Virus record (IMG/VR): IMGVR_UViG_3300025121_000011
Coordinates: 62,001-126,000 of that record
DNA: 64,000 bases
Reading direction: 5' to 3' (one strand)
The position numbers and the translations under genes were made by a program. Shown here in pieces: positions 25,366 through 46,630 of this stretch. Every line of letters begins with the position of its first letter. The first letter of the stretch is position 1. The notes beneath the pieces were generated by a model. The model did not search any database. It was not told where the DNA came from and was given only the letters and a program-made list of their open reading frames with translations.

Positions 25366-28239
25366 ATGTCAAAATATCAACAAGATTTAATTAAAAGTGA
25401 AGAAGAATTATTTAGTCAAATACGTTCTAGTTTTTTAGACTATGATCCTGCTCATTTTGTGGAAAACAATTTAACTATTGATGGCCAGTCTTTTAAAATC
25501 ATTGGTAATGGCTGGAAATTTATGGCAGACATTTATCGATATATTGCTCTGCAAGCTACAACCGGCACAGGAAAACCGGTTGTATTATGTAAAGGTCGTC
25601 AGATCGGCGCCACTATGATGGCTGGTGCATTAGATTTATATTTGACAAATAGTGGATTATTTTCTAATCCACCAATTCGAGTTCTACACGCCTTTCCTTC
25701 TTTAGCTATGGTTAAAAAGTTTACTCAAGATAAATTAGAGGGTATGGTTAGAACGGCTAAAGATGATTTTATTAATAAAAATAAATTACATTCTACCAAT
25801 GCAGTAGATAATTTAACTATGAAGCAGTTTAATACTGGCACTATTTGGGTTGATAGTTTGGGTAGAGATGCAGACAGAATAAGAGGTATGACAACAGATG
25901 CTATCTTTTTTGATGAATGTTTTCCATACAACCAAAATATAGAAATAGAAGGTGGAAAAAAAATATTTATAGGCAAAATTTATGATATGTATAAAAATAA
26001 TAAAACTTTGCCAAAAATAAAATCTTTTAATGAATCAAGTCAATTATTTGAATATAAAAGCGTAATAAATGCTTGGAATAGAGGGGAAAAAGAATTAATA
26101 GAAGTAGTCTGTAATAGAAGAAAAATTAAATGTACTGAAAATCATTTATTTTTAACAGATTCTGGATGGAAAAAAGCTAAAGAATTAACATCTAATGATT
26201 TATTGGTTTCATCTTTTGGCGGAGGACAAATGTCTTATGCCCTTGGAGATGAACAACATCAGGTTGTGTTAGGATCTTTTCTCGGAAATGGTCATTTAGA
26301 TAATTATGCAAATAAAAAATATAGATTATCGGTAATTCATTCTGAAAAGCAAACAGCTTATTGCTCTTGGAAAGCATCTCTTTTTGATTCTAAATTAACA
26401 TTAGTTGAAGAAAATAGATATGCAAAAAATAAAGCTATCAAATTCACAACAAAGGGGTTTGGATTATCAAATAAGATTTCCTCTGAAAAAAAATATTGTC
26501 CTCCTTGGATTTTAAAAGATTTAACCGCCATTGGTATTGCCATATGGTATATGGACAAGGGATCTTCAAAATTTTGGAATAATGGTTCTTCTGAAAGCGG
26601 AAGTGGATCTTTATCAACCCATTCTTTTGATGAAAAAACTCAAGAAATGATAGTAGAAAAATTTAAAAATTTAGGAATTCAATGTCATTATAAATCTTAC
26701 AATCATGGCGGTTCTGATTTCTTTTTTATTTACTTTAAGAAAAATGAATTTGATAAATTATGTAAATTAATTGCACCATATATACATCCATCCATAGAAT
26801 ATAAAATTCTTAAAAAGTATAGAAGTGTTAAAAAGCACAACTGGAATGCTAATTATAAGGAATATAGATTTTTAAGTATTAATGATGTACATTATTTAAA
26901 TCAAAAAGAGATCGTTTATGATATAGAAGTTAAAGATAATCATAATTTTGTCGTTACATCTTCTAATCGGGCTAAAAATGCTGGAGGACCATTGGCCCAT
27001 AATTGTCAAGAAATGTATGGTTTAGCTATTGGCAATGCTACTAAAATTCTAACCGCAGCAAAATATGGTCCGGTTGGTAAAGGTGTGCAAGTTTATTTTG
27101 GAACGCCAAAGGAGCGAAGTTCTTTTTTCCATTCCATATGGGAGTTATCAGACCAACGATATTATCATTTGGGATGTACTAACTGCAAGCAAACATTTCC
27201 ATTTTATCTTTCTGGCGATGATAGATGGAAGCACATTTGGGTAGATGGCTTTATTATACAATGCCCACTTTGTGGACATAGGCAACATAAAATAGAAGCA
27301 ATTGAAAATGGAGCATGGGTTCCAACAAAAGATCCAGAAACCGCTAAATATGTTGGATATCATATTAATCAATTATATTTACCACAATTTCCTAAGCAAA
27401 ATATTTTAGATTTAATGCCGGAAAATAATCCTACACAATCAATGAGAGTCTGGAACAACGAAGTAATTGGTGAATTTTATTCTGGTGCTGGTTTACCTTT
27501 AACTAAAGCTGATATTTATGAACACTGTAGAGATGCAGATCGATGCATGGCACGCAGAATAGACTCAAGAGAAAAGAAAACATATCTCGGAGTGGATTGG
27601 GGTGGAAAGGTGGAAAATGATAATATTGATAGAGGTCAATCATTTTCTTGTATTGTTGTATTATCTGCACAACATGATGGAACATTGCTTGTGGAACATA
27701 CACATAAAATTGGTGAACACGGATTTCGTCATAAAATTGCTACTATTAAAGAATGTTATCGTAGATTTGGTATCATACAAGGAGTGTCAGATCATTTTTA
27801 TGGTAATGATGTAGTATCTGATTTACAATTACTTTATCATAGTAAATTTTTAGGAGCACAAGGAAGCGGAAGTTTAGTTAAACCACTTAAATATCGTGAA
27901 GATGAATTAATTATTGGTTATAATAAAGATTTATTAATCGATGAAATTTTTGATAAATTCAGAAAAGGTAAGATTAGATTTCCATGGGGAAGTTATGAGC
28001 ACATAGAATGGCTTATAGATCATTGTACTTCTATGGAAATGGGTGTAAGAATGTCTGGTGGACAACAGATTAAAACTTATAAAAAGGGTAGCATACCAAA
28101 TGATGGATTGATGGCTCTGCTATATGCTTATATAGCTTGGAAATTTGATATCACTCATGGTTTTTCAATTAAACCAGGAATAGATACACAACCAACCATG
28201 ATAAGGCCGTTTTTAGTCCACTTGCCGAGACTTAAATAA
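25366..28239 (+). CDS. terL: terminase large subunit (gpA-like) with intein
   Basis: Walker A KGRQIGAT, Walker B IFFDE, GTP motif III, CxxC..CxxC, nuclease LGVDWG. Confidence 0.92.
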   Translation: MSKYQQDLIKSEEELFSQIRSSFLDYDPAHFVENNLTIDGQSFKIIGNGWKFMADIYRYIALQATTGTGKPVVLCKGRQIGATMMAGALDLYLTNSGLFSNPPIRVLHAFPSLAMVKKFTQDKLEGMVRTAKDDFINKNKLHSTNAVDNLTMKQFNTGTIWVDSLGRDADRIRGMTTDAIFFDECFPYNQNIEIEGGKKIFIGKIYDMYKNNKTLPKIKSFNESSQLFEYKSVINAWNRGEKELIEVVCNRRKIKCTENHLFLTDSGWKKAKELTSNDLLVSSFGGGQMSYALGDEQHQVVLGSFLGNGHLDNYANKKYRLSVIHSEKQTAYCSWKASLFDSKLTLVEENRYAKNKAIKFTTKGFGLSNKISSEKKYCPPWILKDLTAIGIAIWYMDKGSSKFWNNGSSESGSGSLSTHSFDEKTQEMIVEKFKNLGIQCHYKSYNHGGSDFFFIYFKKNEFDKLCKLIAPYIHPSIEYKILKKYRSVKKHNWNANYKEYRFLSINDVHYLNQKEIVYDIEVKDNHNFVVTSSNRAKNAGGPLAHNCQEMYGLAIGNATKILTAAKYGPVGKGVQVYFGTPKERSSFFHSIWELSDQRYYHLGCTNCKQTFPFYLSGDDRWKHIWVDGFIIQCPLCGHRQHKIEAIENGAWVPTKDPETAKYVGYHINQLYLPQFPKQNILDLMPENNPTQSMRVWNNEVIGEFYSGAGLPLTKADIYEHCRDADRCMARRIDSREKKTYLGVDWGGKVENDNIDRGQSFSCIVVLSAQHDGTLLVEHTHKIGEHGFRHKIATIKECYRRFGIIQGVSDHFYGNDVVSDLQLLYHSKFLGAQGSGSLVKPLKYREDELIIGYNKDLLIDEIFDKFRKGKIRFPWGSYEHIEWLIDHCTSMEMGVRMSGGQQIKTYKKGSIPNDGLMALLYAYIAWKFDITHGFSIKPGIDTQPTMIRPFLVHLPRLK
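25918..27003 (+). mobile_element. LAGLIDADG intein in terminase (362 aa), endonuclease probably inactive
   Basis: DE|CFPY...CTENHLF...VYDIEV..HNF...AHN|C; motifs GSFLGNG and WYMDKG. Confidence 0.92.
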
Positions 28240-28248
28240 GGAGATTAA

Positions 28249-31200
28249 ATGAATAGACGAGGAGCGAGAACGCCAAATTCTAATATTTCTAAAGAAAACG
28301 AACCTGTAACTCAAGATACTTTACGTAAATTAAGTGATCTTAGACGAGCAGAGGTGCATCAATCCTTGAGTCGAGAAGAAAAGACGGATGCAGAAAGTAA
28401 TTTTATGCATTCTGCTGTAGCCCATAGTCCTAATTTTAGAAAGACTGCCACTGCAAGTGCTTCAGTTCTTCCAACTACCACGAGCATGTCAGATCGAATG
28501 GCGCCTGATTTATATTCTCCTTTGTTTCAATTGGCGAATTTAAATCTTCCTCGTGATCGTGTTACAATGAATGCGTGGAATAGAATTTTTTATGATACAC
28601 ATCCAATCGTTAGAAATGCAATCAACCTGCATTCATCATATCCTATTTCTAAAATCAATATTACATGTAAAAGTAAAGAGATTCAAGAGTTCTTTTTAGA
28701 AATGGCCGATAGAATAGATTTATATTCTGTTGTGTATGGTGCCTCATTGGAATTTTGGAAAAATGGTGAGTCTTTTCCTTATGCAGAATTAGATAGAAAT
28801 GCTGGTATATGGAAAAGAATCACGATTTTAAATCCTGATTATATTCATGTTAAAAAACCAGCAATAGGCGATCAGACTATAATATCATTAAGGCCAGACG
28901 CTTCTTTACAGCGACTTGTAAACTCCAGCAATCCATCTGATATTCAAATGAAGCATAGAGTACCTAAATATATTTTAGATTATGTTAAAAAAGGACAAAA
29001 TATTCCTTTGGATAATTTAAACATATCGCACCTTAAATTGCTTAGCTCTCCATATGATATTCGTGGAACTTCAATTATAGTATCAGTATATAAAGATTTG
29101 ATGCTTTATGATAAATTGAGGGAATGCTATGATAATCAAACAGAAATTGCAACTTCAGAAGGCTTCAAAAAATACTCAGATGTTATTTATACAGATGATA
29201 ATGGCTGTCATTATTTAAAAGAGAATTTAAAAATTCTTTGTTATAATTCAGAAACAAAAGAGGCTGAATATCATCAACCAACCAATACAATTCTTAAGCC
29301 ATACAATGGAAAAATGTTTCATTTTTCTGGAGAAAAGATTGATGTATGTGTAACTCCAAACCACAGAATGTATGCATCTAAAAAAACAAGTAGAGGCTGG
29401 AACCAATATAAAATTATCAAAGCAGAAGATATGAGTAAAGGATCTTTTTATAGATTTCAAAGCAAAACCGATTTTTCCTCTTCCTGTTTTAAAAATATCA
29501 ACTTTGTTGATATAGGCGATAACACTATTGATATTGATACATATCTAAAATTTGCCGGGTACGTGGTTAGTGAGGGATGCATATATTCCAAATTAAGAGG
29601 AGGTTTGGGATCGATATGGCGCGATAATAAAGTTCTTATTTCTCAGCAACCTACTTCTGATTGTTATGAAGATATAAAATATACTTTTGAAAAGGTAGCC
29701 GATATAATTGGAAGGAAGTTAACTAGCAGTATAGTGATGCAAAAAAGTGGATTTTCATCCACAAATCCGCAGGATATTTGGAAAGCAAGTATCGCAGACA
29801 AAGAACTCACCCTGCATTGTATTGAAGAATTTAGTGTAGATGGCAAGACAGATTCTTATAATAAGAAGATTCCTCGATGGATCTTAAACCTTCCTCCGGA
29901 AAAACAGAAGATAATGCTCGATGCGCTCATAGCTGGTGATGGTTCTGTAGTTCCAAGTAAGTATAAAAATGGAGCAATAGGATATCGTTATAATACAGTA
30001 TCTAGACAACTTGCAGATGATATTTATGAAATGGCCTATAAATGTGGATTCACGCCTAATATAAATATTACAACGCGTCCTGATAGAGATTTTGAAGAAT
30101 ATACTGTTCTATGGTCAGATGGAAATTATGGCGATACTCCATTAGTATATGGCAATCCGAATCACGGTGGAGCAAATATTAATGAAGTTGATTATGATGG
30201 AGACGTCTGGTGCTTTGAAGTACCTACCGGATTATTTGTCACCAGAAGAAATGGTAAAGTAACTATTCAAGGTAATAGTAAGTTTGCTCAAGCTGATGGA
30301 ATGGTAAACCCCTTAACATTAGTTAAGCTTGGAGGCTCTAATGATTATCGTCCAACTCAAGCGGATATTGAAGCATTTAAAATTATATTAGAAGAAGCAC
30401 AATATGATAAAGATTTTAAAATCATTACTCATGATGGGGTCACAATAGAGCGAGCTGGATTCTCTGGTTCTGTATTGGACATAGCGGCAGATATAGAGTT
30501 AATAAATAATAATATTTATACTGGCTTAATGACACCTAAAGCTTTAATGGACCAAGAGGGTGTTTGTATGAGTGTAGATGATAATGAGATTCTAACTGAA
30601 CGTGGATGGCTTTATTATGATGATTTAATTTCTAATGACAAGATTGCTACAGTTGTTCCAGAAACTGGGGAGTTAAAGTTTCATAAGCCGACATTCACTA
30701 CAGATTTTGAATTTACAGGAATGATGTTTAGATTTAAAAATCAAGAAGTAGATATTGAAACTACTGATTTCCATGAAATGTTTCTTTCCAGAAATAATGG
30801 CGTAACCTTTAATAAAGAAAGAGCTTTGAGCATATTTGATATTAATGATATAAATTCTAATAAAGATTTCACTTCTAAACCTGAAGAAAGTGTTAGATTT
30901 AAAACAAGTATAGATTTATGGAAAGGAAAAGACGCACCAGAAGTTATTAAGACTCCTTGCAAAAATGGATATTCTAAAGAAATTTTAATAGGTGATTATT
31001 TGGAATATTTAGGATATTATTTATCAGACAATTATTTAAAATATAAAGATATAAAGTTTGAATTTTTTGCAGAAGATATTTTGTCTGGATACAAAGAAGG
31101 TATTGAAAAACATATACCAGAATCAGTGAAACAATTTTCAAAAGAAAATCTCGAAATACTTTTGAAAGCCTTGGTTTTGAAAAATAGTACAAAAGAGATA

Positions 31201-32109
31201 ACTTGCTGTTTTACGGTTTCAAAACAGTTAGCGGATGATATTCAAGAGATTGCATTTAAATGTAAATATGCTACAAAAATTACTTTAGAAAAAATAGAAA
31301 AAATAGAGAAACAAGTCGATATATACAAAATTATAATCTCTAAGCAAAATGAATTAGAGAAAACCATGCCAATTATAAAACCTACAGATGCTTCCGTTCG
31401 CTGGGTCAACAACTATAGAGTGTTTTGTGTCGAAGTTCCAAATCATGTTTTTGTAACAAGATCTAATGGAAAGATCGCAATACACGGAAATACATATGCG
31501 AGTTCTTCTGTTGGTTTAGAAGTATTAAGACAGCGATATGATATCTTTAGAAATATGCTTAAAAAGTGGTTGGAGCAGAAAATTTTTGCACCAATCTGTG
31601 AAATTCAAGGATTTTTTGAATATGTTGATGGAAAGCAAAGATTGGTTGTTCCTCAAGTAGACTTTAACCATATGAATCTATATGATATGAATGATTACAT
31701 TCAAAATATCTCTAATTTCGTTTCTAACAATCAGGTATCTCTTCAGACTCTGTACCGTAGTCTTGGTTTAAGTAAAGAGGAAGAAGATCGAAGACTTAAG
31801 GAAGAGTTGATTGCAAATGTTATTCGCCAAAAAGAAGAGCAAACTATGAATACTATGCGTCTAGCAGAACTTAGAAACTTGGATGCTGATAGTGCCATTA
31901 CTGAGCCTCCAGATAAAGAACTTCCTGGATTACAAGGTGGAGGTGGTGAAGATATGGGTGGTATACCGGGTGTTGGAGGAGGAGGCGGATTAGATTTAGG
32001 TGGATTACCCGCAATGGGTGGTGGAGAAGCACCGGATCTTAGTTCAGCTTTAGGTGGTGGAGCCCCCGCCGGAGGAGCAGGTCCGGGTGGCGAACCAACT
32101 CCTACATAG
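28249..32109 (+). CDS. portal protein with two inteins and a Gly/Pro-rich tail
   Basis: Follows terL; HPIVRNAI, GESFPY, ILNPDY, RGTSII; about 590 aa after splicing. Confidence 0.85.
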   Translation: MNRRGARTPNSNISKENEPVTQDTLRKLSDLRRAEVHQSLSREEKTDAESNFMHSAVAHSPNFRKTATASASVLPTTTSMSDRMAPDLYSPLFQLANLNLPRDRVTMNAWNRIFYDTHPIVRNAINLHSSYPISKINITCKSKEIQEFFLEMADRIDLYSVVYGASLEFWKNGESFPYAELDRNAGIWKRITILNPDYIHVKKPAIGDQTIISLRPDASLQRLVNSSNPSDIQMKHRVPKYILDYVKKGQNIPLDNLNISHLKLLSSPYDIRGTSIIVSVYKDLMLYDKLRECYDNQTEIATSEGFKKYSDVIYTDDNGCHYLKENLKILCYNSETKEAEYHQPTNTILKPYNGKMFHFSGEKIDVCVTPNHRMYASKKTSRGWNQYKIIKAEDMSKGSFYRFQSKTDFSSSCFKNINFVDIGDNTIDIDTYLKFAGYVVSEGCIYSKLRGGLGSIWRDNKVLISQQPTSDCYEDIKYTFEKVADIIGRKLTSSIVMQKSGFSSTNPQDIWKASIADKELTLHCIEEFSVDGKTDSYNKKIPRWILNLPPEKQKIMLDALIAGDGSVVPSKYKNGAIGYRYNTVSRQLADDIYEMAYKCGFTPNINITTRPDRDFEEYTVLWSDGNYGDTPLVYGNPNHGGANINEVDYDGDVWCFEVPTGLFVTRRNGKVTIQGNSKFAQADGMVNPLTLVKLGGSNDYRPTQADIEAFKIILEEAQYDKDFKIITHDGVTIERAGFSGSVLDIAADIELINNNIYTGLMTPKALMDQEGVCMSVDDNEILTERGWLYYDDLISNDKIATVVPETGELKFHKPTFTTDFEFTGMMFRFKNQEVDIETTDFHEMFLSRNNGVTFNKERALSIFDINDINSNKDFTSKPEESVRFKTSIDLWKGKDAPEVIKTPCKNGYSKEILIGDYLEYLGYYLSDNYLKYKDIKFEFFAEDILSGYKEGIEKHIPESVKQFSKENLEILLKALVLKNSTKEITCCFTVSKQLADDIQEIAFKCKYATKITLEKIEKIEKQVDIYKIIISKQNELEKTMPIIKPTDASVRWVNNYRVFCVEVPNHVFVTRSNGKIAIHGNTYASSSVGLEVLRQRYDIFRNMLKKWLEQKIFAPICEIQGFFEYVDGKQRLVVPQVDFNHMNLYDMNDYIQNISNFVSNNQVSLQTLYRSLGLSKEEEDRRLKEELIANVIRQKEEQTMNTMRLAELRNLDADSAITEPPDKELPGLQGGGGEDMGGIPGVGGGGGLDLGGLPAMGGGEAPDLSSALGGGAPAGGAGPGGEPTPT
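29125..30276 (+). mobile_element. portal intein 1 (384 aa) with apparently intact LAGLIDADG motifs
   Basis: RE|CYD...VTPNHRM...GYVVSEG...ALIAGDG...VWCFEV...QGN|S. Confidence 0.92.
30565..31491 (+). mobile_element. portal intein 2 (309 aa) with decayed endonuclease
   Basis: GV|CMS...TTDFHEM...GYYLSDN...VFCVEVPNH...HGN|T. Confidence 0.9.
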
Positions 32110-33209: not shown

Positions 33210-35072
33210 ATGAAAAAAAATGCATGGCCAGGAGTTATAGGCACCCCAGAAGAATATGGCGATGGACTTGGGTTAACTCAAGATGGCCCAACAAAAATAG
33301 ATTTGCAAACTTCTGTTCCATCGGATGGTTTGACTCCTGAAAAATCTGTATTAGAGAATATGGATTCTGAGCAGGGTTTGTCTGAGACAACGGAATATGC
33401 TGGTGGAATAATTAGTCCGGTAGAAGGTAGTGATTATAATTGGGTTCTTGATGATGTGCGATATAAAAAGGCTCAGGTTACTATATATAAAGGTGCTAAT
33501 GCTCCTTTAGCATCTTTTCAATGTGGAATAGCAGAAAGTGTTCAAGACCAAGTAATCGGATTACAATCATATAAATCATTAGATGACTCCGCTGGTTTAT
33601 TATTTAAATATAGTCGGCCTCAAAGTGTATTATATCACATGGGAACGGTAACATTTCCAATAGATATTTTATTTGTAGATGATGAAAATATTATTAAAAA
33701 AGTTTATAGCAATATTCAGCCGGGATCTTTGGCTACTTTTGGATGTGCTGAAATAAAATATGTTTTAGAAATTCACGGAGGATTGTCATCTAGACTTGGA
33801 ATTGATACAGGTGATATGATTGATATAGAGACATTATCAAGTTTTTTAAAAGATGCAACTAAAATTGCACAAGAAGTTGGGTTTGTTAAGGCGGCTATTG
33901 TTACTAATTTTAAATTTCAAGACAATTCTAATATGAATTGGAAGGGATTTCCTATAATTAATATAAATACAGGTTTAATTAAAACAGCCTCAGAGAAATC
34001 TAAATTATCATCAACTGCTGAGTTTTTAAAAGTATCTCCGATAACTAATAAAGTTGTAACCGCTTTTTATATTGATGGCTTAATAAACGCAGCTCCAATG
34101 GTTAAATATTATAATAATTATAGTGAAGTAGATGATTCTTGGAATGGAACACTAGACATAGATATCTATGGTAGAACAATAACTGTAGGTAAAGGCAAGG
34201 AAAAAGACGCTCGGTTAGAATTGCCGTATGGAAAAGACACTATGGTTAGAAAGAGCTTTGCTTCTTTTATGTATATGGATTCAAATGATTATTATAATAA
34301 GGAAGTATTTAAATTTTTAGAAGATATTGTGGCTGCAACTAAAGTGAGTAATAAAATAATTATTTGCACCTCCATGAGAGAACCTAAACATTTGCTTAAA
34401 ATGTTACAGCATAAAATATATTATAGTCTCGGTGAAATTATTAATTTAGAAGCATCTCAGATTTTGCAAATTTCTGAAGAAATGGATGCACAAAATATTT
34501 TAGAATGCATCTCTGAGAGATATCCAGAGGCTAAAATAGAAATTAGAGCAGATAACTCTATTTTAAAGCGGGCTGGTGTGCCTGTATCAGATGATATAAA
34601 AAAGAAAGCTAAAGAAATTTTAAAGATGCTAGATCGAGCAATAGAGTTGATAGAAGATTCTTTAGATAAAATGTTGCAAAATAAGATGGAATATGAAAAA
34701 CATCAAGATAATGCTGAAGTAATAGAAAAATCTAAGGGGCAATTTCATCAGTCTGCAAAAAGAAACATAAGAATCATTAAGGCATATTTAATTAAAATCA
34801 GAGATGCTATTAGAATTTTTAATGATATTAAAGATGCAACGACTACTTTAGAAATTATTGATGGTTTAGTATCATCTTCTAAATCTGCATCTGATGCAGC
34901 AGAAAAGATCTTTGCTTTACGAGATAAAGTTGGTTCTCCTGATTTTTTTATGGAGTTTTCTGCACATACAGATGGATATGAGCGTACAATAGAAGACTTA
35001 GTCTCTTCTGTGGAGCGTGCCAAAGAATATATAAATACAAATATTTTGGGTATGATTGTTTTATCAGAGTAA
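33210..35072 (+). CDS. multidomain protein with a DUF192-like domain and C-terminal coiled coil
   Basis: GLQ..SL..AGLLF..HM..VTFPIDILFVD..YVLEI.GG; domains bounded by KKA, KTA and KRA. Confidence 0.65.
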   Translation: MKKNAWPGVIGTPEEYGDGLGLTQDGPTKIDLQTSVPSDGLTPEKSVLENMDSEQGLSETTEYAGGIISPVEGSDYNWVLDDVRYKKAQVTIYKGANAPLASFQCGIAESVQDQVIGLQSYKSLDDSAGLLFKYSRPQSVLYHMGTVTFPIDILFVDDENIIKKVYSNIQPGSLATFGCAEIKYVLEIHGGLSSRLGIDTGDMIDIETLSSFLKDATKIAQEVGFVKAAIVTNFKFQDNSNMNWKGFPIININTGLIKTASEKSKLSSTAEFLKVSPITNKVVTAFYIDGLINAAPMVKYYNNYSEVDDSWNGTLDIDIYGRTITVGKGKEKDARLELPYGKDTMVRKSFASFMYMDSNDYYNKEVFKFLEDIVAATKVSNKIIICTSMREPKHLLKMLQHKIYYSLGEIINLEASQILQISEEMDAQNILECISERYPEAKIEIRADNSILKRAGVPVSDDIKKKAKEILKMLDRAIELIEDSLDKMLQNKMEYEKHQDNAEVIEKSKGQFHQSAKRNIRIIKAYLIKIRDAIRIFNDIKDATTTLEIIDGLVSSSKSASDAAEKIFALRDKVGSPDFFMEFSAHTDGYERTIEDLVSSVERAKEYINTNILGMIVLSE

Positions 35073-35134: not shown

Positions 35135-38100
35135 ATGTCTACTTCAGGATTTATTAAAATTGGTTATTCTAGCGGTAATGTGGTTAAAGAAGTTTCTTCT
35201 GATATTGTTGCTGCCTCTCCACATATTTTGGCTAGACTAGAAAAACTCGCTAATACCTCTAAAGTATTGGCTCCTAAATCAGATGATTTTTTATATTTTA
35301 CAATTATATTTTTAAAAGCAGCGGAATCCGCTCTTGTTGATGATGATGGAAATTTAAAAAAAGTCGGTCACGAGCGTGCTTGGGGATATTTTGATGATAA
35401 ATATCATTGGCATGGAAATGTTCCAGCGCACAAAAATAATAATGGTGATATATTTCCTGAATCTGAATTAAAGAAGGCAGCTAGAGATTGGATTGGAACA
35501 CCATTATGTGTAGACCACAAATCAGAATCTGTTGATGGTATTCGTGGAATTATTTTAGATACTTATTATGATGAAAAGCACAAACAGGTTGTTGGTCTTT
35601 GTGCTTTGGATAAAGTGAATTATCCAAATTTAGCTCGAAAAGTTCAAACGGGTGTAGTGCGGTATGGCTCCATGGGAACTGCTGTAACTACTTCTATTTG
35701 CAGCGATTGTGGGAATAGAGCTACCACTCCTAAAGAGTATTGTGTCTGTGTTACAGCACGTTCAGCATATGGAGAAGTTAATATTGGTCTAAAGCCAATG
35801 GAATATAGTTTAGTAGTTCAGCCTGCCGAACCGGGTGCGCGATTGCTTCGATGTATTGCTTCTATAGGAGAACATAAGGCTGAATTAAGTAATTATGGAG
35901 TTTCTGATTTTGAAAAGTTTAGTGCTCAATTATCCTTGGGACAAGCAGAAGAATTAGACCAAATTTTAAAAGTTGCTTGTGGTCCACGTGGTTGTTCAGT
36001 AACTCAGCGCCAATCTATAGTAAATAATTATTTGCATAAGTATAATCTTGTTAAAACAGCAGAAGAAGGCGGATTAAGGTGGAGTGAAAATAGAGAGGTG
36101 CAGTTTGCTAAAGCGTTATCTCAATTGAGAGATGCAGGGGCTTCTGATTCTGATATTTCAGATTTATATGAAAGTTTTGGCAAATCCTATGATGATTCTC
36201 TTGAGAATAATATGTCTGTTGGTCAAGGAGAAACCTTTAGTAGCGGACAAGATGCTTCTGGAAGGGCAGCTATAGAAACTGTTGATAATGAAGGGGTTAG
36301 AGGAACTGGTGGAGAGTCTACCGGATTAGTTGCTAGTGATAATGGTGAGAATATTGATACATTTCAAACGGGAGGCGTAGGTCCTGAAACTTATGCTTTT
36401 TCTAGTTTAGATAAAAATAAAACGCATAAAAACATTATGGAGGAAATAATGAATGATTCTAAGTTAAACAAACGAGCGGAATTACGTCGTCGGATTGCAT
36501 ATTACTATGGTGGAGCCGCAGGAGATGGTAAGGCTGAACCTGTAGAGCCAAGTACTTTTACTTCAGAAGATTACAAGAAATATTGGATGGACGACAAACA
36601 CATGCATCAAGATAAGGCAATGGGCGGTCAAGATGGTATGTTTCCTGGTGACGAACAAGTTAAGGAACAACAGAAGCGCGCTCAGTTGGCCCAACGTCGA
36701 TTGGAGAGAAAAGCTTACTTTTATGGTGGAGCCGCAGGAGATGGTAAGGCTGAACCCGTAGAGCCAAGCACTTTTACTTCAGAAGATTACAAGAAATATT
36801 GGATGGATGATAAGCATATGCACCAGGATAAAGCTATGGGTGGACAAGATGGTATGTTTCCTGGTGACGAACAAGTTAAGGAACAACAGAAGCGCGCTAG
36901 ATTAAGTACAAAATTTAAGCAAGTTCGAGCACTAAATGGTGCGATCAACAAACAGGCTTCATGTTTTGAAGTTTATGCTGATGATAAATTAATTTTAGCA
37001 ACAACTGCTAAAGATATTTATGGTCCAAAACTAGAAGAGAATTGGAAGTTTTTAACCAGCAAAGAGTATGGCAAGGCTGTTGTTGCAGCTATTCGTACTG
37101 ATGGTTTACGTTCTGTGGCTGGAAAGCTTACTAGATTAGGTCAAGCAGATCCGATGGCTGGATTAGGTGCTCCTCCTGCTGCTCCCGGTGCTTTGGATGC
37201 TCCAATGCCGGAAGAGGCTCCCCTACCAGAAGAATCTATAATGCCAGAAGAAGATCCAGAAGCTGGTGCTGAGGATATTGACGAAGAAGATCCTCAAGCT
37301 AAAGCATCAGATGCTTTAGTGGTAGTAGAGGAAGCTTTTGCTGATCTAAAAGAAGCAATTGAAGACTTGGGCAGTGGAAAAGGTGGAGTAGAAGTAAATA
37401 TTGATACAGATGCCGACAAACCAGTAGATGAAATTACCAATCTATCTCGTAACCTTTTAAAAGATATGAAGATTGTTTTGGCAGAATCTAGTGAATCAGC
37501 TGACGAATTAGCTTTAATTATTGAAGCTTATGATCACAAAAATAGGATTTCTCCTAAAAAGTACTCAGAGCTTAAATCACTAACTGCTAGTGCATTGGAA
37601 GATTCAGCACAATTAACCAGCGAAGCACGTACCCTGCTAAAGATGGCAAAGATTGTTTCTTCGGCTATGGTAAAAACTTCTGAATATGTAGAAGAAGCAG
37701 AAGATAGTGCAAAAGAACGAGAGGAAGTAGCTACTAAAGAGCCCTCAGGAAAAGATACTTCAAAGGCAGCCTCAAAGGCAGAGTCTGAGTTGTTTGCTCA
37801 GGCGCTTAATTTACGTAAACAACGTAGATTAGCTTTGTTAGAATCTGCTCGTAAAAAAATTGCTATGGAAGCTTTAGATTCAGACGAAGTAGAAAATGAA
37901 TCTCCAGATTTAAATGAAGCAGATGATGGTGCTGGTCATGCGCAACGCGTAGCAGAATCAACTCCAAAAGGTGATTCTGATAAAGCAGGTGCTCCGGCCG
38001 TTCCAGTAGGTACCCCTCAAGAGGTGGCTAATAAAGCTCCAACAGGTAATCTGGCTGATGACGGAAAATTCAACTTAGCTGACGATAAAGAAAATGAAAT

Positions 38101-38590
38101 GGAAGATATTGCAGAAGAAGAAGCTGAAGAAGAAGTTGAAGAGCACGAAGAAGATATGCATGGTGGGAAAGATGAAAATGATGCAAATGACGTAGTCCCA
38201 AATGATGGCGTTCAGGGTGCGTCTTTTGTAGTTGAAAAACTTCCATCACCACGCGCTGCAATAGCTAAAAAGTTGATTGAAAGAAAAGCGGCAGAAGAGA
38301 AGGAGGCCGTTAAACTTCGGATGAGAAGAGCTTATGACTTAGCAATGGATATGCAACGCAAGGGTTTGATTGCTCCAACTAGAGCATCATTAGATAGCCA
38401 AGTAGATTTGGTTTTAGAATTTGATGACAAAGCCTTTGAAGCATTTAAACGATCTATAGCTAATGCGAGAATGCCTGAGACTATTAAGGTTGCTAGTGAT
38501 CTTGGCGGATTAAACATAGGTTATGAAACACCTGAGGATGCACCACAAAGATCAATGGTAGAAAATCTTTCTGCATTATTCAACAAATAA
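35135..38590 (+). CDS. prohead protease/scaffold polyprotein
   Basis: N-terminal NNNGDIF..G.PLCVDH..RGIILD..SMG..CSDCG..EYSLV..PA; acidic coiled-coil C-terminus; lies between portal and capsid genes. Confidence 0.75.
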   Translation: MSTSGFIKIGYSSGNVVKEVSSDIVAASPHILARLEKLANTSKVLAPKSDDFLYFTIIFLKAAESALVDDDGNLKKVGHERAWGYFDDKYHWHGNVPAHKNNNGDIFPESELKKAARDWIGTPLCVDHKSESVDGIRGIILDTYYDEKHKQVVGLCALDKVNYPNLARKVQTGVVRYGSMGTAVTTSICSDCGNRATTPKEYCVCVTARSAYGEVNIGLKPMEYSLVVQPAEPGARLLRCIASIGEHKAELSNYGVSDFEKFSAQLSLGQAEELDQILKVACGPRGCSVTQRQSIVNNYLHKYNLVKTAEEGGLRWSENREVQFAKALSQLRDAGASDSDISDLYESFGKSYDDSLENNMSVGQGETFSSGQDASGRAAIETVDNEGVRGTGGESTGLVASDNGENIDTFQTGGVGPETYAFSSLDKNKTHKNIMEEIMNDSKLNKRAELRRRIAYYYGGAAGDGKAEPVEPSTFTSEDYKKYWMDDKHMHQDKAMGGQDGMFPGDEQVKEQQKRAQLAQRRLERKAYFYGGAAGDGKAEPVEPSTFTSEDYKKYWMDDKHMHQDKAMGGQDGMFPGDEQVKEQQKRARLSTKFKQVRALNGAINKQASCFEVYADDKLILATTAKDIYGPKLEENWKFLTSKEYGKAVVAAIRTDGLRSVAGKLTRLGQADPMAGLGAPPAAPGALDAPMPEEAPLPEESIMPEEDPEAGAEDIDEEDPQAKASDALVVVEEAFADLKEAIEDLGSGKGGVEVNIDTDADKPVDEITNLSRNLLKDMKIVLAESSESADELALIIEAYDHKNRISPKKYSELKSLTASALEDSAQLTSEARTLLKMAKIVSSAMVKTSEYVEEAEDSAKEREEVATKEPSGKDTSKAASKAESELFAQALNLRKQRRLALLESARKKIAMEALDSDEVENESPDLNEADDGAGHAQRVAESTPKGDSDKAGAPAVPVGTPQEVANKAPTGNLADDGKFNLADDKENEMEDIAEEEAEEEVEEHEEDMHGGKDENDANDVVPNDGVQGASFVVEKLPSPRAAIAKKLIERKAAEEKEAVKLRMRRAYDLAMDMQRKGLIAPTRASLDSQVDLVLEFDDKAFEAFKRSIANARMPETIKVASDLGGLNIGYETPEDAPQRSMVENLSALFNK
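36500..36898 (+). repeat. two direct repeats (period 216 nt) encoding near-identical 61-aa peptides
   Basis: Y(Y/F)YGGAAGDGKAEPVEP...GMFPGDEQVKEQQKRA at 36500-36682 and 36716-36898. Confidence 0.97.
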
Positions 38591-43996: not shown

Positions 43997-45010
43997 ATGT
44001 TTAATACACAAGGCGAATTAAGCGCAAAAAACGTAAAAGATGCTTTGGCCCAGATCGTAAGGTATGCGTCAATTATTGAAGAGTTAGCACCTTCTAGTTC
44101 AGCTCTATCTCAAGGTTCCTCACTAAATGAAGAGCAGAGAGATGAGATGATCAAGCAAGCTCTAATGACTCAAGAAGGCAAAATTGCTTTAGGTCAGGCT
44201 ATGGCCAACCCAATCCGAAGAAACCTTGACTATCAGGGTGTAGGACGAAAGGCTCTCGTAGTCGATCCCCTCCCACAAGGTGCTTTGCCAATATATGACC
44301 GCGATATTGATGTTGGTGCAGTTGTTATTTCTAGTAACGGTACCGCTCCAGAATCACGCGTTTTTGGTGACAGAGTAACTATTCCTGAGTTTGAAGTGGT
44401 TTCTAACCCAACTGTCCGTATTGCTGAAGTCAAGCGTCGGAGATTTAATGTTATCGATCGTGCCCAGCAAAAGGCTCGTCAGGAAATTCAAGCCCAGGAA
44501 GACAAGAACGTATTTGCTGCTCTTGATTTCGCAACTGATAGTGCTAAAGGTGGAGAGAATGCCTACCAGCGTTTAGATAATACTACAACTGCTGATGAAC
44601 TTTCAAAGCAGGGCCTTTTGGCTCTAAAGCGTCAAGTTGATCGGTGGGACCTGGTAACTTCTAAATATTTTATGCATATCAACGAATTTACCGATATGCT
44701 CAATTGGGAATCTGCTGGTGCTGCTGGTGCTTCACAGGTAGATCCTGTTACTCAGCGTGAATTGCTACAAACTGGCCTTTATGGCTCAATCTTCGGTGCC
44801 GACATCATCGTCTCTAAGGTTGTTGAGAACCGTCAGGTTTTCGCAGTTGCAGATCCTGAGTTCGTAGGTGTTATGCCTATTCGCCAGGACATAGAAGTAT
44901 TACCCGCTGACGAACCTAAACAATTGAAGTTAGGCTGGGTGGTGAGTGAAATAATAGGTATAGGTATCGTCAATCCTCGTGGCGCTGCAAGTGGTTATGT
45001 GACTGATTAA
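43997..45010 (+). CDS. major capsid protein (HK97 fold)
   Basis: ALGQAMANPIR, P.FEV.SNP.V, IQAQED, G.IFGADI..S; strong SD, optimised codons, strong downstream terminator. Confidence 0.85.
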   Translation: MFNTQGELSAKNVKDALAQIVRYASIIEELAPSSSALSQGSSLNEEQRDEMIKQALMTQEGKIALGQAMANPIRRNLDYQGVGRKALVVDPLPQGALPIYDRDIDVGAVVISSNGTAPESRVFGDRVTIPEFEVVSNPTVRIAEVKRRRFNVIDRAQQKARQEIQAQEDKNVFAALDFATDSAKGGENAYQRLDNTTTADELSKQGLLALKRQVDRWDLVTSKYFMHINEFTDMLNWESAGAAGASQVDPVTQRELLQTGLYGSIFGADIIVSKVVENRQVFAVADPEFVGVMPIRQDIEVLPADEPKQLKLGWVVSEIIGIGIVNPRGAASGYVTD

Positions 45011-45214: not shown

Positions 45215-46630
45215 ATGAATGATAATTTTGATACCAAAACATGCTCTGCGTGCAAGCAAACAAAATCAATATCTGAATTTGGAAAAGATAAATATAATTT
45301 AGATAATTTAAAATCTCAATGCAAAGCATGTTGCCATGATATTTATTTAAAACGAACTTCAGATCCTGCAAAAAAACAAAAAATGATAGATACGAGAGAT
45401 AAGTGGAGAATCGAAAACAAAGAGCATTATAATGCAAGCGCCCTTGAGCATTATCATTTAAATAAAGATAAAATTAATGCAAAACGAGCTGAAAAGCGAA
45501 AAAAATTAAAAAGTAATAAAATTAAAGAGCCTATAAATATTAACCTATTAACTCATAAAACCTGTAAGAAGTGTGAACAGAGATTATCATTAGTTGATTT
45601 TGATCATAATAATATAACCAAAGATGGTTATGAGAATAGTTGTAAATCTTGTCGAAAAGAGCAAAGACGCAAAAGTGTTTTAAAAAAACAACAACAGATT
45701 GCGTTCGGAATAGTACAGGCTCCAACTATTAAAAAATGCAAAGTATGTCAACAAACCTTATTGATAGATTCTTTTAATAAAGATTCTTCTAGAGGTGATG
45801 GTTATGAAACGGCTTGTAAAACTTGTAAAAGTAAATTACATTCTAAATATATTTCAAATCCAATAAATAAAAGAAAATATCTATTAAAAAGCAAAAAATG
45901 GAGACTGGAAAATTTAGAACACTATAAAAGAGTAAATAAAAAATACTATATAGTACACAGAGAGGAAAGATTAAAAAAGAATGCAGAATATCACAAAACA
46001 GATAATGGCCGATGGACAAGTCTTATTTGTCAGGCAAATTATCGCAAAAAGAATGTTTCTATCTCTATGAGTGAATTTTTGGAAATAACTTCTAAGCCAT
46101 GTAGATATTGTGGTATATTAAATAATAATGGTATTGATAGAATAGACTCTAGTAAAGGATATGAAATAAATAATTGTGCTCCATGCTGTACGCGATGCAA
46201 TTATATGAAAAATGCATTAAGTGAATCTGAATTCTTTAATCATCTTCGTAAAATATCTTCTTATCAAGAAACCGGAGAAATAGAAGATGTTCTTCCTCAT
46301 GTAAAATATTCTGGTAATATAACGAAAGATATGTATCTTACACCAACCGCAAGATATAATGTGCACAAAAGAAGAGCGAGAAAGAAAGGTTTTCAATTTG
46401 CTTTATCATATACTTATTTTATTAAGTATTGGCAAAAACCATGTCATTATTGTGGCTCTGTTATAAATACAATTGGATTAGATAGAGTAAACAACGATGA
46501 AGGTTATATTCCGGAGAATATTGTTTCTTGTTGTCAAACGTGTAATTCTATGAAATCTGTTTCTCTACAATCAGATTTTTTAAATCACGTACAAGCAATT
46601 TTAACCTTTTTGCAAAATAATATTAAATAA
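45215..46630 (+). CDS. HNH endonuclease with three CxxC..CxxC modules and two HNH-like domains
   Basis: CRYCG..GIDRIDSSKGY..CCTRCNYMK and CHYCG..GLDRVNNDEGY..CCQTCNSMK. Confidence 0.8.
   Translation: MNDNFDTKTCSACKQTKSISEFGKDKYNLDNLKSQCKACCHDIYLKRTSDPAKKQKMIDTRDKWRIENKEHYNASALEHYHLNKDKINAKRAEKRKKLKSNKIKEPININLLTHKTCKKCEQRLSLVDFDHNNITKDGYENSCKSCRKEQRRKSVLKKQQQIAFGIVQAPTIKKCKVCQQTLLIDSFNKDSSRGDGYETACKTCKSKLHSKYISNPINKRKYLLKSKKWRLENLEHYKRVNKKYYIVHREERLKKNAEYHKTDNGRWTSLICQANYRKKNVSISMSEFLEITSKPCRYCGILNNNGIDRIDSSKGYEINNCAPCCTRCNYMKNALSESEFFNHLRKISSYQETGEIEDVLPHVKYSGNITKDMYLTPTARYNVHKRRARKKGFQFALSYTYFIKYWQKPCHYCGSVINTIGLDRVNNDEGYIPENIVSCCQTCNSMKSVSLQSDFLNHVQAILTFLQNNIK

What the first reader, a model, noticed from the sequence alone, without database searches (positions are those of the whole stretch)
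36500..36898. Duplicated 61-aa peptide cassette in the scaffold, bracketed by putative cleavage sites and conserved at protein level
Seen: RRIA|YYYGG...QQKRA|QLAQRRLERKA|YFYGG...QQKRA|. The two peptides differ by one residue. The DNA differences are synonymous and cluster centrally (gacgacaaacacatgcatcaagataaggcaatgggcggtcaa versus gatgataagcatatgcaccaggataaagctatgggtggacaa), while the flanks are near-identical. Inference: purifying selection plus partial gene conversion; two copies of a functional peptide (HMH, Asp- and Met-rich, possibly metal-binding) are released from each scaffold molecule.
Basis: partly seen in the sequence, partly recalled or inferred. Interest (0 to 1): 0.65.

Follow-up and report, generated by a model that had tools for sequence, protein, structure and literature searches.

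The report
Two-copy disordered cassette in phage scaffold
A jumbo phage's head-assembly protein (a protease fused to a scaffold) carries two near-identical copies of a conserved, unstructured 61-residue segment; the pair is ancient, kept at exactly two copies in a large family of uncultured phages, and was recently partly homogenised by gene conversion, but nothing yet shows that it is cut out as a free or metal-binding peptide.

Summary
Window 36500-36682 and 36716-36898 encode two 61-aa cores that differ by one residue (Y/F). Of 183 nt, 15 differ: 13 synonymous codons, 10 of them in codons 31-43 (permutation P about 1.5e-4). dN/dS is 0.011. The host ORF (35135-38590, 1151 aa) is a T4-gp21/assemblin-type head protease fused to a scaffold, in the head module of a complete 335-kb phage whose MCP is 50% identical to Bacillus phage G gp27.

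The cassette defines a family of 178 cluster representatives. All 141 listed proteins of 1,000 aa or more carry the protease domain, and 140 of 141 have exactly two copies. The duplication is ancient, because copies usually group by position. In the window phage a 54-nt tract of copy 2 was overwritten by copy 1, and one natural haplotype is mosaic. So selection plus partial conversion is supported.

AlphaFold predicts the cores as disordered. The HMH histidines are not conserved. The bracketing "RA" and "AY" residues are conserved, and an "RRAY" recurs at residue 1066, but cleavage there is untested.

A conserved internal Shine-Dalgarno plus ATG (36439-36451) suggests a nested scaffold protein that begins just before the cassettes.

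My best reading is a bivalent docking or processing module of the scaffold N-terminus. Novelty: new variant of a known kind.

The parts
35135..38590 (+). Host gene: 1151-aa head-maturation protease fused to a scaffold
   Evidence: ORF. PHROG head maturation protease hit at aa 113-208. Lies between portal and MCP.
35222..35869 (+). Protease domain (about aa 30-245), T4 gp21/herpesvirus assemblin-type fold; H128 and S179 are invariant
   Evidence: AlphaFold model. 5jbl is the top match: Foldseek probability 0.97, VIA Z 7.0 over 121 aligned residues, with herpesvirus proteases at Z 3.4-4.4. Invariant columns.
36439..36443 (+). Internal Shine-Dalgarno-like GGAGG inside the coding frame, 5 nt before an in-frame ATG
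   Evidence: A GGAG-core motif is present in 10 of 10 homologous genes with DNA, although the encoded residues vary (EE, GE, ED, GD, AED). Coordinates.
36449..36451 (+). In-frame ATG (Met439): candidate start of a nested 713-aa protease-less scaffold, 'MNDSKLNKRAEL...'
   Evidence: Gene callers start here on several truncated contigs.
36446..36508 (+). Basic linker 1 (aa 438-458), predicted helix; holds conserved 'RA' (A448) and 'A-Y' (A455/Y456)
   Evidence: Model secondary structure. Motif conservation 93% at both sites.
36500..36682 (+). Cassette copy 1, 61-aa core (aa 456-516); 6.9 kDa, pI 4.9; predicted disordered
36683..36715 (+). Inter-copy basic linker (aa 517-527, QLAQRRLERKA), part of predicted helix 506-529
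36716..36898 (+). Cassette copy 2, 61-aa core (aa 528-588)
36590..36628 (+). Unconverted central patch of copy 1 (codons 31-43); its partner in copy 2 is 36806-36844; 10 of 39 nt differ, all synonymous
36845..36898 (+). Conversion tract: codons 44-61 of copy 2, identical to copy 1 (36629-36682) and copy-1-type compared with relatives
   Evidence: 0 of 54 nt differ here against 17-18 of 54 in P0002/P0004. Both window copies show 13-15 differences to the relatives' copy 1 and 24-25 to their copy 2. Chance of such a tract is about 6.5e-10.
36887..37144 (+). Confidently folded beta+alpha domain (about aa 585-670) directly after copy 2; fold not matched
   Evidence: pLDDT above 90. Best PDB Z is 5.1. 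No BFVD match at E of 1e-3 or better.
38324..38335 (+). Conserved 'RRA-Y' (R1064-Y1067), 85 residues from the C-terminus, at the start of the conserved C-terminal segment
   Evidence: 100% RA and 95% A-Y in 41 homologs. [RK][RK]A[YFW] occurs about 87 aa from the end in 81 of 140 family members.
38333..38587 (+). Conserved C-terminal segment (aa 1067-1151), candidate shell-binding end of the scaffold (inferred by analogy)
   Evidence: Conservation profile.
43997..45010 (+). Major capsid protein (context), 50% identical to Bacillus phage G gp27, with an N-terminal extension of about 40 aa

Best explanation
The feature is an ancient tandem duplication of a 72-aa unit, made of a basic helical linker and a 61-aa acidic core rich in Gly and Pro. 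It sits inside the protease-scaffold polyprotein of a phage-G-related clade of uncultured jumbo phages. SHOWN: Both cores are under strong purifying selection. The family keeps exactly two copies. The copies normally keep position-specific identity. In the window phage, gene conversion recently overwrote at least the last 18 codons of copy 2 with copy 1 and left the centre unconverted. INFERRED: The cores are intrinsically disordered short-linear-motif modules. The family consensus is [KR]xAYxQGG ... Yxx[ED] ... DK[QH]M ... GxxxG[LM]xPGDxxxKxxLxRA. They likely form a bivalent docking or recognition site at the N-terminal end of the scaffold. That scaffold is probably also made on its own from a conserved internal ribosome-binding site and Met439, as with lambda C/Nu3, Mu I/Z and herpesvirus UL26/UL26.5. 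In the procapsid core the pair would engage a partner, either the maturation protease itself or another core or shell protein. It would then be removed with the rest of the scaffold by the fused protease. The conserved Ala sites (RA at 448, 516 and 588; RRA-Y at 1066) are the leading candidates for processing sites, but this is not shown.
For: The repeat and its substitution pattern are confirmed. Host protein and context: PHROG protease hit, gp21/assemblin fold, and a head module running terminase, portal, DUF192 protein, this gene, MCP. The genome is a complete 335-kb phage with terminal repeats. Family: 46 relatives from the word search, 44 with two copies. The profile search finds 178 representatives; all 141 proteins of 1,000 aa or more have the protease domain, and 140 of 141 have exactly two cassettes. 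Ancient duplication: when a unit's nearest neighbour lies in another protein, it is the same-position copy in 163 cases and the other-position copy in 15. In one subclade of 11 genomes the copy-1 units form a single clade and most copy-2 units another. Homogenisation: 46 of 140 proteins have reciprocal-nearest copies. The window's 54-nt identical tract is copy-1-type. A mosaic haplotype exists in run X5, with T>C at 36541 and 36553. Selection: dN/dS is 0.011 in the window and 0.067 in L004. P0035's copies are identical over 54 aa with 12 synonymous differences. Disorder: pLDDT is 44-61 and coil in the cores, and helices occur only in the basic linkers. Boundary motifs are conserved. The internal SD plus ATG is conserved in 10 of 10 genes, against 7.5% of internal Mets with a motif of 5 nt or more; 17 of 17 gene starts checked in the window use SD-type sites.
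Against: No partner was identified; the complex prediction of cassette with MCP and protease gave no answer. No proteomic or N-terminal data exist for any member, since all are metagenomic. A low pLDDT could reflect the shallow alignment (41 sequences) rather than true disorder. The putative Ala-P1 sites lie in predicted helices. The nearest solved protease (T4 gp21) cleaves after Glu (PMC9958956 and established knowledge). [LIVM]-x-E motifs at residues 436 and 441 are also conserved, although that conservation may instead reflect the internal ribosome-binding site. Internal initiation is inferred from DNA only. The 'short' database proteins I checked were truncated contigs with frames open to the edge.
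Confidence: 0.5

Rival explanations
1. First reader's model. The head protease cuts out each 61-aa core at RRIA|Y / ERKA|Y and at QQKRA|. Two free acidic peptides of about 7 kDa per scaffold molecule then act as functional, possibly metal-binding, internal peptides of the virion. This would resemble T4 internal peptides II and VII.
For: The 'RA' and 'AY' boundary residues are among the best-conserved positions: A84/Y94 at the start and R87/A73 at the end, in percent of 280 units. A fourth, combined 'RRA-Y' site sits where a herpesvirus-like maturation site would be expected. The protease has the assemblin-type fold, and herpesvirus members of that fold cut after Ala (established knowledge). 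The cores are acidic and small, pI 4.9 and 6.9 kDa. T4 scaffold proteins are degraded to small peptides (PMC9958956).
Against: There are no cleavage data. The sites lie in predicted helices. The histidines of HMH are not conserved, at Q59/H33 and V30/H24 percent, so metal binding through them cannot be the family function. The linker between the cores is itself conserved and repeated, so 'AY' and 'RA' may simply be structural parts of one 72-aa unit. T4 gp21 specificity is P1 Glu.
Confidence: 0.15
2. The cassettes are pseudo-substrate or substrate arrays for the fused protease. They would occupy or recruit the active site, in cis or in trans, to time activation. Their only role would be to be cut.
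For: They sit in the same polypeptide, downstream of the protease. T4 gp21 is held inactive by its own N-terminal segment in the active site (PMC9958956). Disordered conserved motifs are typical protease substrates. The boundary motifs are conserved.
Against: The complex prediction gave no signal, which is uninformative. Conservation spans about 55 residues, far more than a protease subsite needs. If the nested start is used, most cassette copies would be on protease-less chains.
Confidence: 0.2
3. The repeat is a recent, functionally neutral duplication, or an assembly artefact, in a low-complexity scaffold region.
For: Scaffold proteins in this window contain other short low-complexity repeats.
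Against: Two copies occur in 140 of 141 family members down to about 40% identity. Copies show position-specific orthology. dN/dS is 0.01-0.07. Three identical independent assemblies exist, and bridging contigs come from four studies.
Confidence: 0.02
4. The conserved element acts at the nucleic-acid level, as an RNA structure or a recombination site, and not as protein.
For: The DNA tracts in the flanks are identical.
Against: Differences between copies are almost all synonymous. Orthologous DNA is 23-26% divergent while the protein is conserved. P0035's copies are protein-identical with 12 synonymous changes. No other-frame ORF of 60 aa or more overlaps the cassettes.
Confidence: 0.02

Closest known systems
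Herpesvirus protease-scaffold pair (HSV-1 UL26 / nested UL26.5, assemblin)
   Same: The N-terminal protease has the same fold class and is fused to a long scaffold. There is a candidate in-frame nested start for a protease-less scaffold. Conserved Ala-containing sites lie after the protease part and about 85 residues from the C-terminus, ahead of a conserved C-terminal segment. This mirrors the release and maturation sites (A|S) known for assemblin (established knowledge).
   Different: There is no sequence similarity outside the fold. Cleavage here is not demonstrated. Herpesvirus scaffolds have no duplicated conserved disordered cassette. The candidate sites here are R-A|x and [KR]-x-A|Y, not (V/L)-x-A|S.
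Phage lambda C/Nu3, Mu I/Z and P2 gpO (protease-scaffold fusions, some with a nested scaffold gene)
   Same: One ORF encodes the protease and then the scaffold. In lambda and Mu an internal in-frame start gives the scaffold alone (established knowledge). The conserved internal GGAGG-N5-ATG fits that arrangement.
   Different: Those proteins are far smaller and lack the two-copy cassette. Internal initiation here is inferred from DNA only.
T4 prohead core (gp21 protease, gp22/gp67/gp68) and its scaffold-derived internal peptides
   Same: The closest solved structure to the protease domain is T4 gp21. T4 scaffold proteins are degraded to small peptides by gp21 (PMC9958956), and some acidic fragments stay in the head (own knowledge).
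   Different: In T4 the protease and scaffold are separate genes. The T4 cleavage rule is (L/I)-x-E|, whereas the conserved cassette boundaries are Ala-based. No repeated cassette is known in gp22.
Bacillus phage G head module (gp14 portal, gp19 protease, gp27 MCP)
   Same: It is the closest cultured relative: MCP 50% identical, protease domain 33.5% identical, and the same gene order.
   Different: Phage G gp19 is 300 aa, protease only. No cassette match was found in its 17-kb head module. Its MCP lacks the 40-aa N-terminal extension.

Membership tests
T4 gp21 / herpesvirus assemblin-type prohead protease (N-terminal domain of the host protein) | Characteristic protease fold | tested here: met
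   5jbl is the top match: Foldseek probability 0.97, E 1.2e-3; VIA Z 7.0, rmsd 3.7, 121 residues aligned. VZV, PRV, HSV, KSHV and HCMV proteases score Z 3.4-4.4. Support is moderate because Z is below 8.
T4 gp21 / herpesvirus assemblin-type prohead protease (N-terminal domain of the host protein) | Conserved catalytic Ser and His | tested here: inconclusive
   H128 and S179 are invariant in 41 homologs. I did not map them residue by residue onto the gp21 catalytic residues, and the model has pLDDT below 50 at residues 127-135.
T4 gp21 / herpesvirus assemblin-type prohead protease (N-terminal domain of the host protein) | Sequence-family match and position in the head module | tested here: met
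   phrog_18299 head maturation protease, E 5.4e-13. tblastn matches phage G gp19 and annotated head maturation proteases. The gene lies between portal and MCP. There is no Pfam hit.
Protease-scaffold fusion with a nested scaffold gene (lambda C/Nu3, Mu I/Z, herpes UL26/UL26.5) | Protease and scaffold-like region in one ORF | tested here: met
   The 1151-aa ORF has the protease at aa 30-245, followed by a long acidic, largely low-complexity region with a conserved C-terminus. The scaffold function itself is inferred.
Protease-scaffold fusion with a nested scaffold gene (lambda C/Nu3, Mu I/Z, herpes UL26/UL26.5) | In-frame internal translation start with its own ribosome-binding site | tested here: inconclusive
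   The sequence signature is present and conserved in 10 of 10 genes: a GGAG core 3-8 nt before the ATG. The encoded residues vary, and GAG is used where Glu is encoded. Whether it is translated cannot be tested with these tools.
Scaffold-derived internal peptides released by the head protease (T4 peptides II/VII type) | Flanked by sites that match the protease's demonstrated specificity | not testable with these tools
   The specificity of this protease clade is unknown. The conserved RA and AY residues are candidates only.
Scaffold-derived internal peptides released by the head protease (T4 peptides II/VII type) | Free peptide detected in virions | not testable with these tools
   No cultured member exists. 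The phage G proteomics paper maps no cleavage sites, and phage G lacks the cassette.
His/Met metal-binding peptide motif | Conserved metal-liganding His residues | tested here: not met
   Over 280 units, the first His position is Q 59% / H 33%, and the second is V 30% / H 24% / T 9%. Only D (98%), K (85%) and M (92%) of 'DKHMH' are conserved.
Tandem paralogs under concerted evolution (gene conversion) | Paralogs within a genome more alike than orthologs, with mosaic tracts | tested here: met
   Within-genome copies differ at 8-12% of nt and between-genome copies at 23-26%. A 54-nt identical copy-1-type tract lies next to a saturated central patch. 46 of 140 proteins have reciprocal-nearest copies. 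A mosaic haplotype occurs in run X5.

The most novel reading that the evidence does not exclude
The fused protease of this jumbo-phage clade has an assemblin-like Ala-P1 specificity. It would cut at KRA| (residues 448, 516, 588) and RRA|Y (residue 1066). This would detach the protease, release exactly two conserved acidic peptides of about 7-8 kDa per scaffold chain, and free the scaffold from its shell-binding C-terminus. The two peptides would be retained as stoichiometric internal components of the capsid with a function of their own. That would be a phage counterpart of herpesvirus scaffold processing combined with T4-type internal peptides.
Probability: 0.12. Interest if true: 0.65.

Novelty: new variant of a known kind. 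Interest (0 to 1): 0.42.

Why it matters
Scaffold proteins of giant phages are poorly understood, and their sequences usually evolve too fast to reveal functional motifs. Here one motif stands out. It is disordered, strictly two-copy, and held under strong purifying selection across at least 178 sequence clusters of uncultured jumbo phages related to phage G. That gives a concrete, testable handle on how a very large capsid core is organised or processed. Possibilities include a bivalent docking site, a processing cassette, or retained internal peptides. The finding also suggests that the herpesvirus/lambda-style arrangement, a protease-scaffold fusion with a nested scaffold, extends to this clade. 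Finally, it is a clean natural example of concerted evolution inside a single gene, with a conversion tract, an unconverted patch and a segregating mosaic haplotype.

Tried and rejected
(1) Pfam and PHROG scans of the cassette alone gave nothing significant. The best hit was phrog_33233 at E about 0.1.

(2) Phage collection searches: megablast found no match, and tblastn matched only the protease domain.

(3) PDB sequence searches with the protease domain, both as a single sequence and as a profile, found nothing meaningful.

(4) Fold searches of the domain next to the cassettes gave a best PDB Z of 5.1 and no BFVD hit at E of 1e-3 or better, so the fold stays unassigned.

(5) ESM Atlas look-alike search of residues 440-600 gave no usable hit.

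(6) Complex prediction with MCP, protease domain and the cassette region returned 'no answer' with score 0.00. This is not evidence for or against binding.

(8) A possible link to the bS21-encoding huge-phage clade (PMC9723584) was checked. The genome has no bS21 gene, so I dropped it.

(9) 'Short' database proteins starting at or near the cassette were considered as evidence for stand-alone scaffold genes. The two with DNA (L091, L092) are truncated contigs whose frames stay open to the edge, so they were rejected as proof. P0095 has an upstream gap, but no DNA was available.

(10) T4-type [LIVM]-x-E sites were considered as the real cleavage sites. Conserved ones exist at residues 436, 441 and 797. 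Those at 436 and 441 overlap the internal SD/ATG, so their conservation may be at the nucleotide level. This is unresolved.

(11) A search for RNA runs found no RNA holders.

No alternative genetic code was needed.
Full report
OBSERVATION

Window 36500-36682 and 36716-36898 encode two 61-aa cores (aa 456-516 and 528-588) of ORF 35135..38590, which is 1151 aa long. The repeat finder reports 186 nt at 91% identity with 216-nt spacing. Tandem Repeats Finder reports period 216 and 1.8 copies.

The cores differ by one residue, YYY versus YFY. Of 183 nt, 15 differ. These are 13 synonymous codons plus the 2-nt Y-to-F change. Ten synonymous changes fall in codons 31-43, and a permutation test over synonymous sites gives P about 1.5e-4. 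Codons 44-61 are identical between the copies. dN/dS is 0.011, with a binomial P of 5.5e-10 against neutrality.

The true unit is 72 aa, because a basic linker ('..KRA-EL..RR..xA') precedes each core and is itself repeated.

Two other IMG/VR assemblies encode the identical protein. Contigs from four independent groundwater or soil studies bridge copy 1, the linker and copy 2 with no alternative joints.

WHAT THE HOST GENE IS

The window is part of a complete 335,169-bp phage genome with direct terminal repeats. The gene lies in the head module. The order is an intein-containing large terminase (25366-28239), an intein/LAGLIDADG-containing portal (28249-32109), a DUF192 protein (33210-35072), this gene, and then the major capsid protein (43997-45010).

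Residues about 30-245 are a head-maturation protease. The evidence is phrog_18299 at E 5.4e-13 and tblastn matches to phage G gp19 and to annotated head proteases. An AlphaFold model has T4 gp21 (5jbl) as its best PDB match, with Foldseek probability 0.97 and VIA Z 7.0 over 121 residues. Herpesvirus proteases follow at Z 3.4-4.4.

The rest of the protein is acidic and largely low-complexity, with conserved islands at aa 541-660 and 1051-1110. This is the make-up of a protease-scaffold fusion.

The closest cultured relative is Bacillus phage G, whose MCP is 50% identical. In phage G the protease gp19 is a separate 300-aa protein, and its head module has no cassette.

DISTRIBUTION AND COPY NUMBER

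The word search found 46 relatives at 40-100% identity over the cassette region, many on contigs of 100-420 kb. An HMM of the core finds two copies in 44 of them.

A profile of 55 units searched against 1.84 billion representatives found 178 proteins at E of 1e-3 or better. I analysed the listed ones together with the 46 from the word search. All 141 proteins of 1,000 aa or more carry the protease domain, and 140 of 141 have exactly two cassettes. Start-to-start spacing ranges from 54 to 193 aa, with a median of 77. The cassette occurs nowhere else in the window or in the genome. It has no Pfam or PHROG family.

Over 280 units the conserved positions (in percent) are:
- [KR] 95, A 84, Y 94, Q 78, G 100
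- Y/F 97, E/D 90
- D 98, K 85, M 92
- G 82, G 87, P 79, G 75, D 83
- K 89, R 87, A 73

The first position is Q59/H33 and the second is V30/H24.

HISTORY: ANCIENT DUPLICATION, PURIFYING SELECTION, RECURRENT CONVERSION

In a tree of 88 units, many genomes have sister copies. In one subclade of 11 genomes, however, all copy-1 units form one clade and most copy-2 units another.

In the wider set, 46 of 140 proteins have copies that are reciprocal nearest neighbours. Otherwise the nearest unit is the same-position copy of another protein in 163 cases and the other-position copy in 15. So the duplication predates the family, the copies have positional identity, and homogenisation is lineage-specific.

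For the window phage, conversion is shown directly. Close relatives P0002 and P0004 differ between their copies at 17-18 of 54 nt in codons 44-61, where the window has 0 of 54. Both window copies are copy-1-type there, with 13-15 differences to the relatives' copy 1 and 24-25 to their copy 2. The chance of such a tract is about 6.5e-10.

The central 39 nt are near synonymous saturation (10 of 13 codons differ), so they have not been converted for a long time. The Y/F difference is an ancestral copy-specific state, because most close relatives have YYY in copy 1 and YFY in copy 2.

In run X5 the copy-1 contig carries the copy-2 bases at 36541 and 36553. These are the only two paralog-differing sites between codon 3 and the central patch of the 5' segment. 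The contig stays copy-1-type in the centre, so it is a segregating mosaic haplotype.

Selection acts on both copies independently of conversion. P0035's copies are identical over 54 aa yet differ at 12 of 162 nt, all synonymous and evenly spread. L004 has dN/dS of 0.067.

STRUCTURE

An AlphaFold model of aa 436-690, built from 41 sequences, gives pLDDT 44-61 and no secondary structure for both cores. Helices occur only at the basic linkers (aa 438-458 and 506-529). A confidently folded beta+alpha domain covers aa ~585-670, with pLDDT above 90. That domain has no convincing PDB or BFVD match.

The cassette therefore looks like a conserved intrinsically disordered region that carries short linear motifs. 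The caveat is that the alignment is shallow.

THE PROPOSED CLEAVAGE SITES

In 41 full-length homologs, 'RA' is conserved at residue 448 (93%), 516 (100%) and 588 (98%). '[AS]-Y' is conserved at 455 (93%) and 527 (100%).

A combined 'RRA-Y' is conserved at 1066 (100% for RA, 95% for A-Y), at the start of the conserved C-terminal 85 residues. In the wider family, 81 of 140 proteins have [RK][RK]A[YFW] about 87 residues from the end.

This layout resembles the herpesvirus release and maturation sites, which are Ala-P1 (established knowledge). Three points count against treating them as shown:
- No cleavage data exist.
- The sites lie in predicted helices.
- T4 gp21, the nearest solved protease, cuts after Glu (PMC9958956; established knowledge).

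A complex prediction of the cassette with MCP and protease returned 'no answer'. It is not evidence either way.

AN INTERNAL START BEFORE THE CASSETTES

At 36439-36443 there is a GGAGG. Five nucleotides later comes an in-frame ATG (36449-36451, Met439).

In all ten homologous genes for which I fetched DNA, and in two truncated contigs, an in-frame ATG lies 5-20 codons before copy 1's 'AY'. It is preceded by GGAGG, AGGAG, GGAG or AGGA at 3-8 nt. The encoded residues vary (EE, GE, ED, GD, AED, SEDS, SEES), but the purine core is kept. Glu at that position is always GAG, although GAA is the commoner codon gene-wide.

Controls support this. All 17 gene starts checked in the window have an SD-type motif, while only 7.5% of 319 internal Mets have one of 5 nt or more. 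Gene callers often start exactly here on truncated contigs.

This suggests a nested 713-aa scaffold of about 78 kDa, whose N-terminus is the cassette pair. Lambda C/Nu3, Mu I/Z and herpes UL26/UL26.5 have the same arrangement. The suggestion rests on DNA only.

MOST LIKELY MECHANISM

I consider the following shown:
- The pair is ancient and fixed at two copies.
- It is under strong purifying selection.
- It is periodically homogenised by gene conversion.
- It sits in a protease-scaffold polyprotein.

I infer the following. The pair is a disordered, bivalent docking or recognition module at the N-terminal, core-facing end of the scaffold. It engages a partner in the procapsid, either the protease or another core or shell protein. 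It is then removed at maturation. The Ala sites are the leading candidates for processing.

Its metal-binding element is not supported. A neutral repeat, an assembly artefact and a nucleic-acid-level element are all rejected.

COMPARISON AND NOVELTY

The gene architecture is of a known kind, a protease-scaffold fusion that probably has a nested scaffold. The protease belongs to the gp21/assemblin fold class with moderate support. What is new is the strictly two-copy, conserved, disordered cassette that defines a large uncultured jumbo-phage family. I found no family model for it and no description in the papers I searched. I rate it a new variant of a known kind, of moderate interest.

LIMITS

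- All relatives are metagenomic, and no proteomic or expression data were found.
- Catalytic residues were not mapped onto gp21.
- AlphaFold disorder is a prediction.
- Counts of 'independent' relatives are affected by shared ancestry.
- Entry 5 and this report give the correct ones.

Noticed in passing
window 36439-36451: A conserved in-frame Shine-Dalgarno (GGAGG) plus ATG (Met439) lies inside the protease-scaffold gene, just upstream of cassette copy 1. It suggests a nested 713-aa scaffold protein. It is conserved at the DNA level in 10 of 10 homologs, although the encoded amino acids vary.
   Followed up: yes
window 25366-28239 and 28249-32109: Both the large terminase and the portal gene appear to carry inteins or homing endonucleases. 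In TerL, Intein_splicing plus LAGLIDADG_2 lie at aa 204-530. In the 1286-aa portal, LAGLIDADG_3 lies at aa 556-621. One homolog of the protease-scaffold (P0025, 1459 aa) also has Hint/LAGLIDADG domains.
   Followed up: no
window 33210-35072: A 620-aa protein with a DUF192 domain (PF02643, E 3e-20) sits immediately upstream of the protease-scaffold gene. It is conserved in that position in the relatives inspected (L004, L007-L010, L093, L094, L096). Its role in head assembly is unknown.
   Followed up: partly
window 35699-35749 (aa 189-205 of the protease-scaffold): A Cys cluster, C189-x2-C192 ... C203-x-C/H205, sits inside the protease domain. C189, C192 and C203 are invariant in 41 homologs. 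It looks like a zinc-knuckle insertion, which I do not know from T4 gp21.
   Followed up: no
window 36887-37144 (aa ~585-670): A confidently predicted beta+alpha domain (pLDDT above 90) follows copy 2 directly. It has no convincing PDB or BFVD fold match (best Z 5.1). It is among the best-conserved parts of the protein outside the protease domain.
   Followed up: partly
window 43997-44120 (MCP aa 1-40): The MCP has an N-terminal extension of about 40 residues, 'MFNT..YASIIEEL..', that is absent from phage G gp27 as annotated. It is conserved in the IMG/VR relatives whose N-termini were inspected, and 304 relatives at 76% identity or above match from residue 1. It contains [IV]-x-[ED] and L-x-[ED] motifs and may be a propeptide.
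   Followed up: partly
window 37196-37300 and 37950-38200: The scaffold's acidic part holds further short in-frame repeats: 18-nt units encoding 'EAPLPE'-like hexapeptides, and 'PTGxxADDG' motifs that are expanded in relative L004. This is low-complexity variation in length between relatives.
   Followed up: no
window 45215-46630 and 47167-48480: An HNH/endonuclease VII-like gene lies right after the MCP. An adenylosuccinate lyase (Lyase_1 plus ADSL_C), an auxiliary metabolic gene, lies next to the head module.
   Followed up: no
window 36541 and 36553 (run X5): A natural variant of copy 1 carries the copy-2 bases at exactly the two paralog-differing sites of that part of the 5' segment. It is a mosaic haplotype, seen in one contig at depth 18.5 in one groundwater study.
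   Followed up: partly
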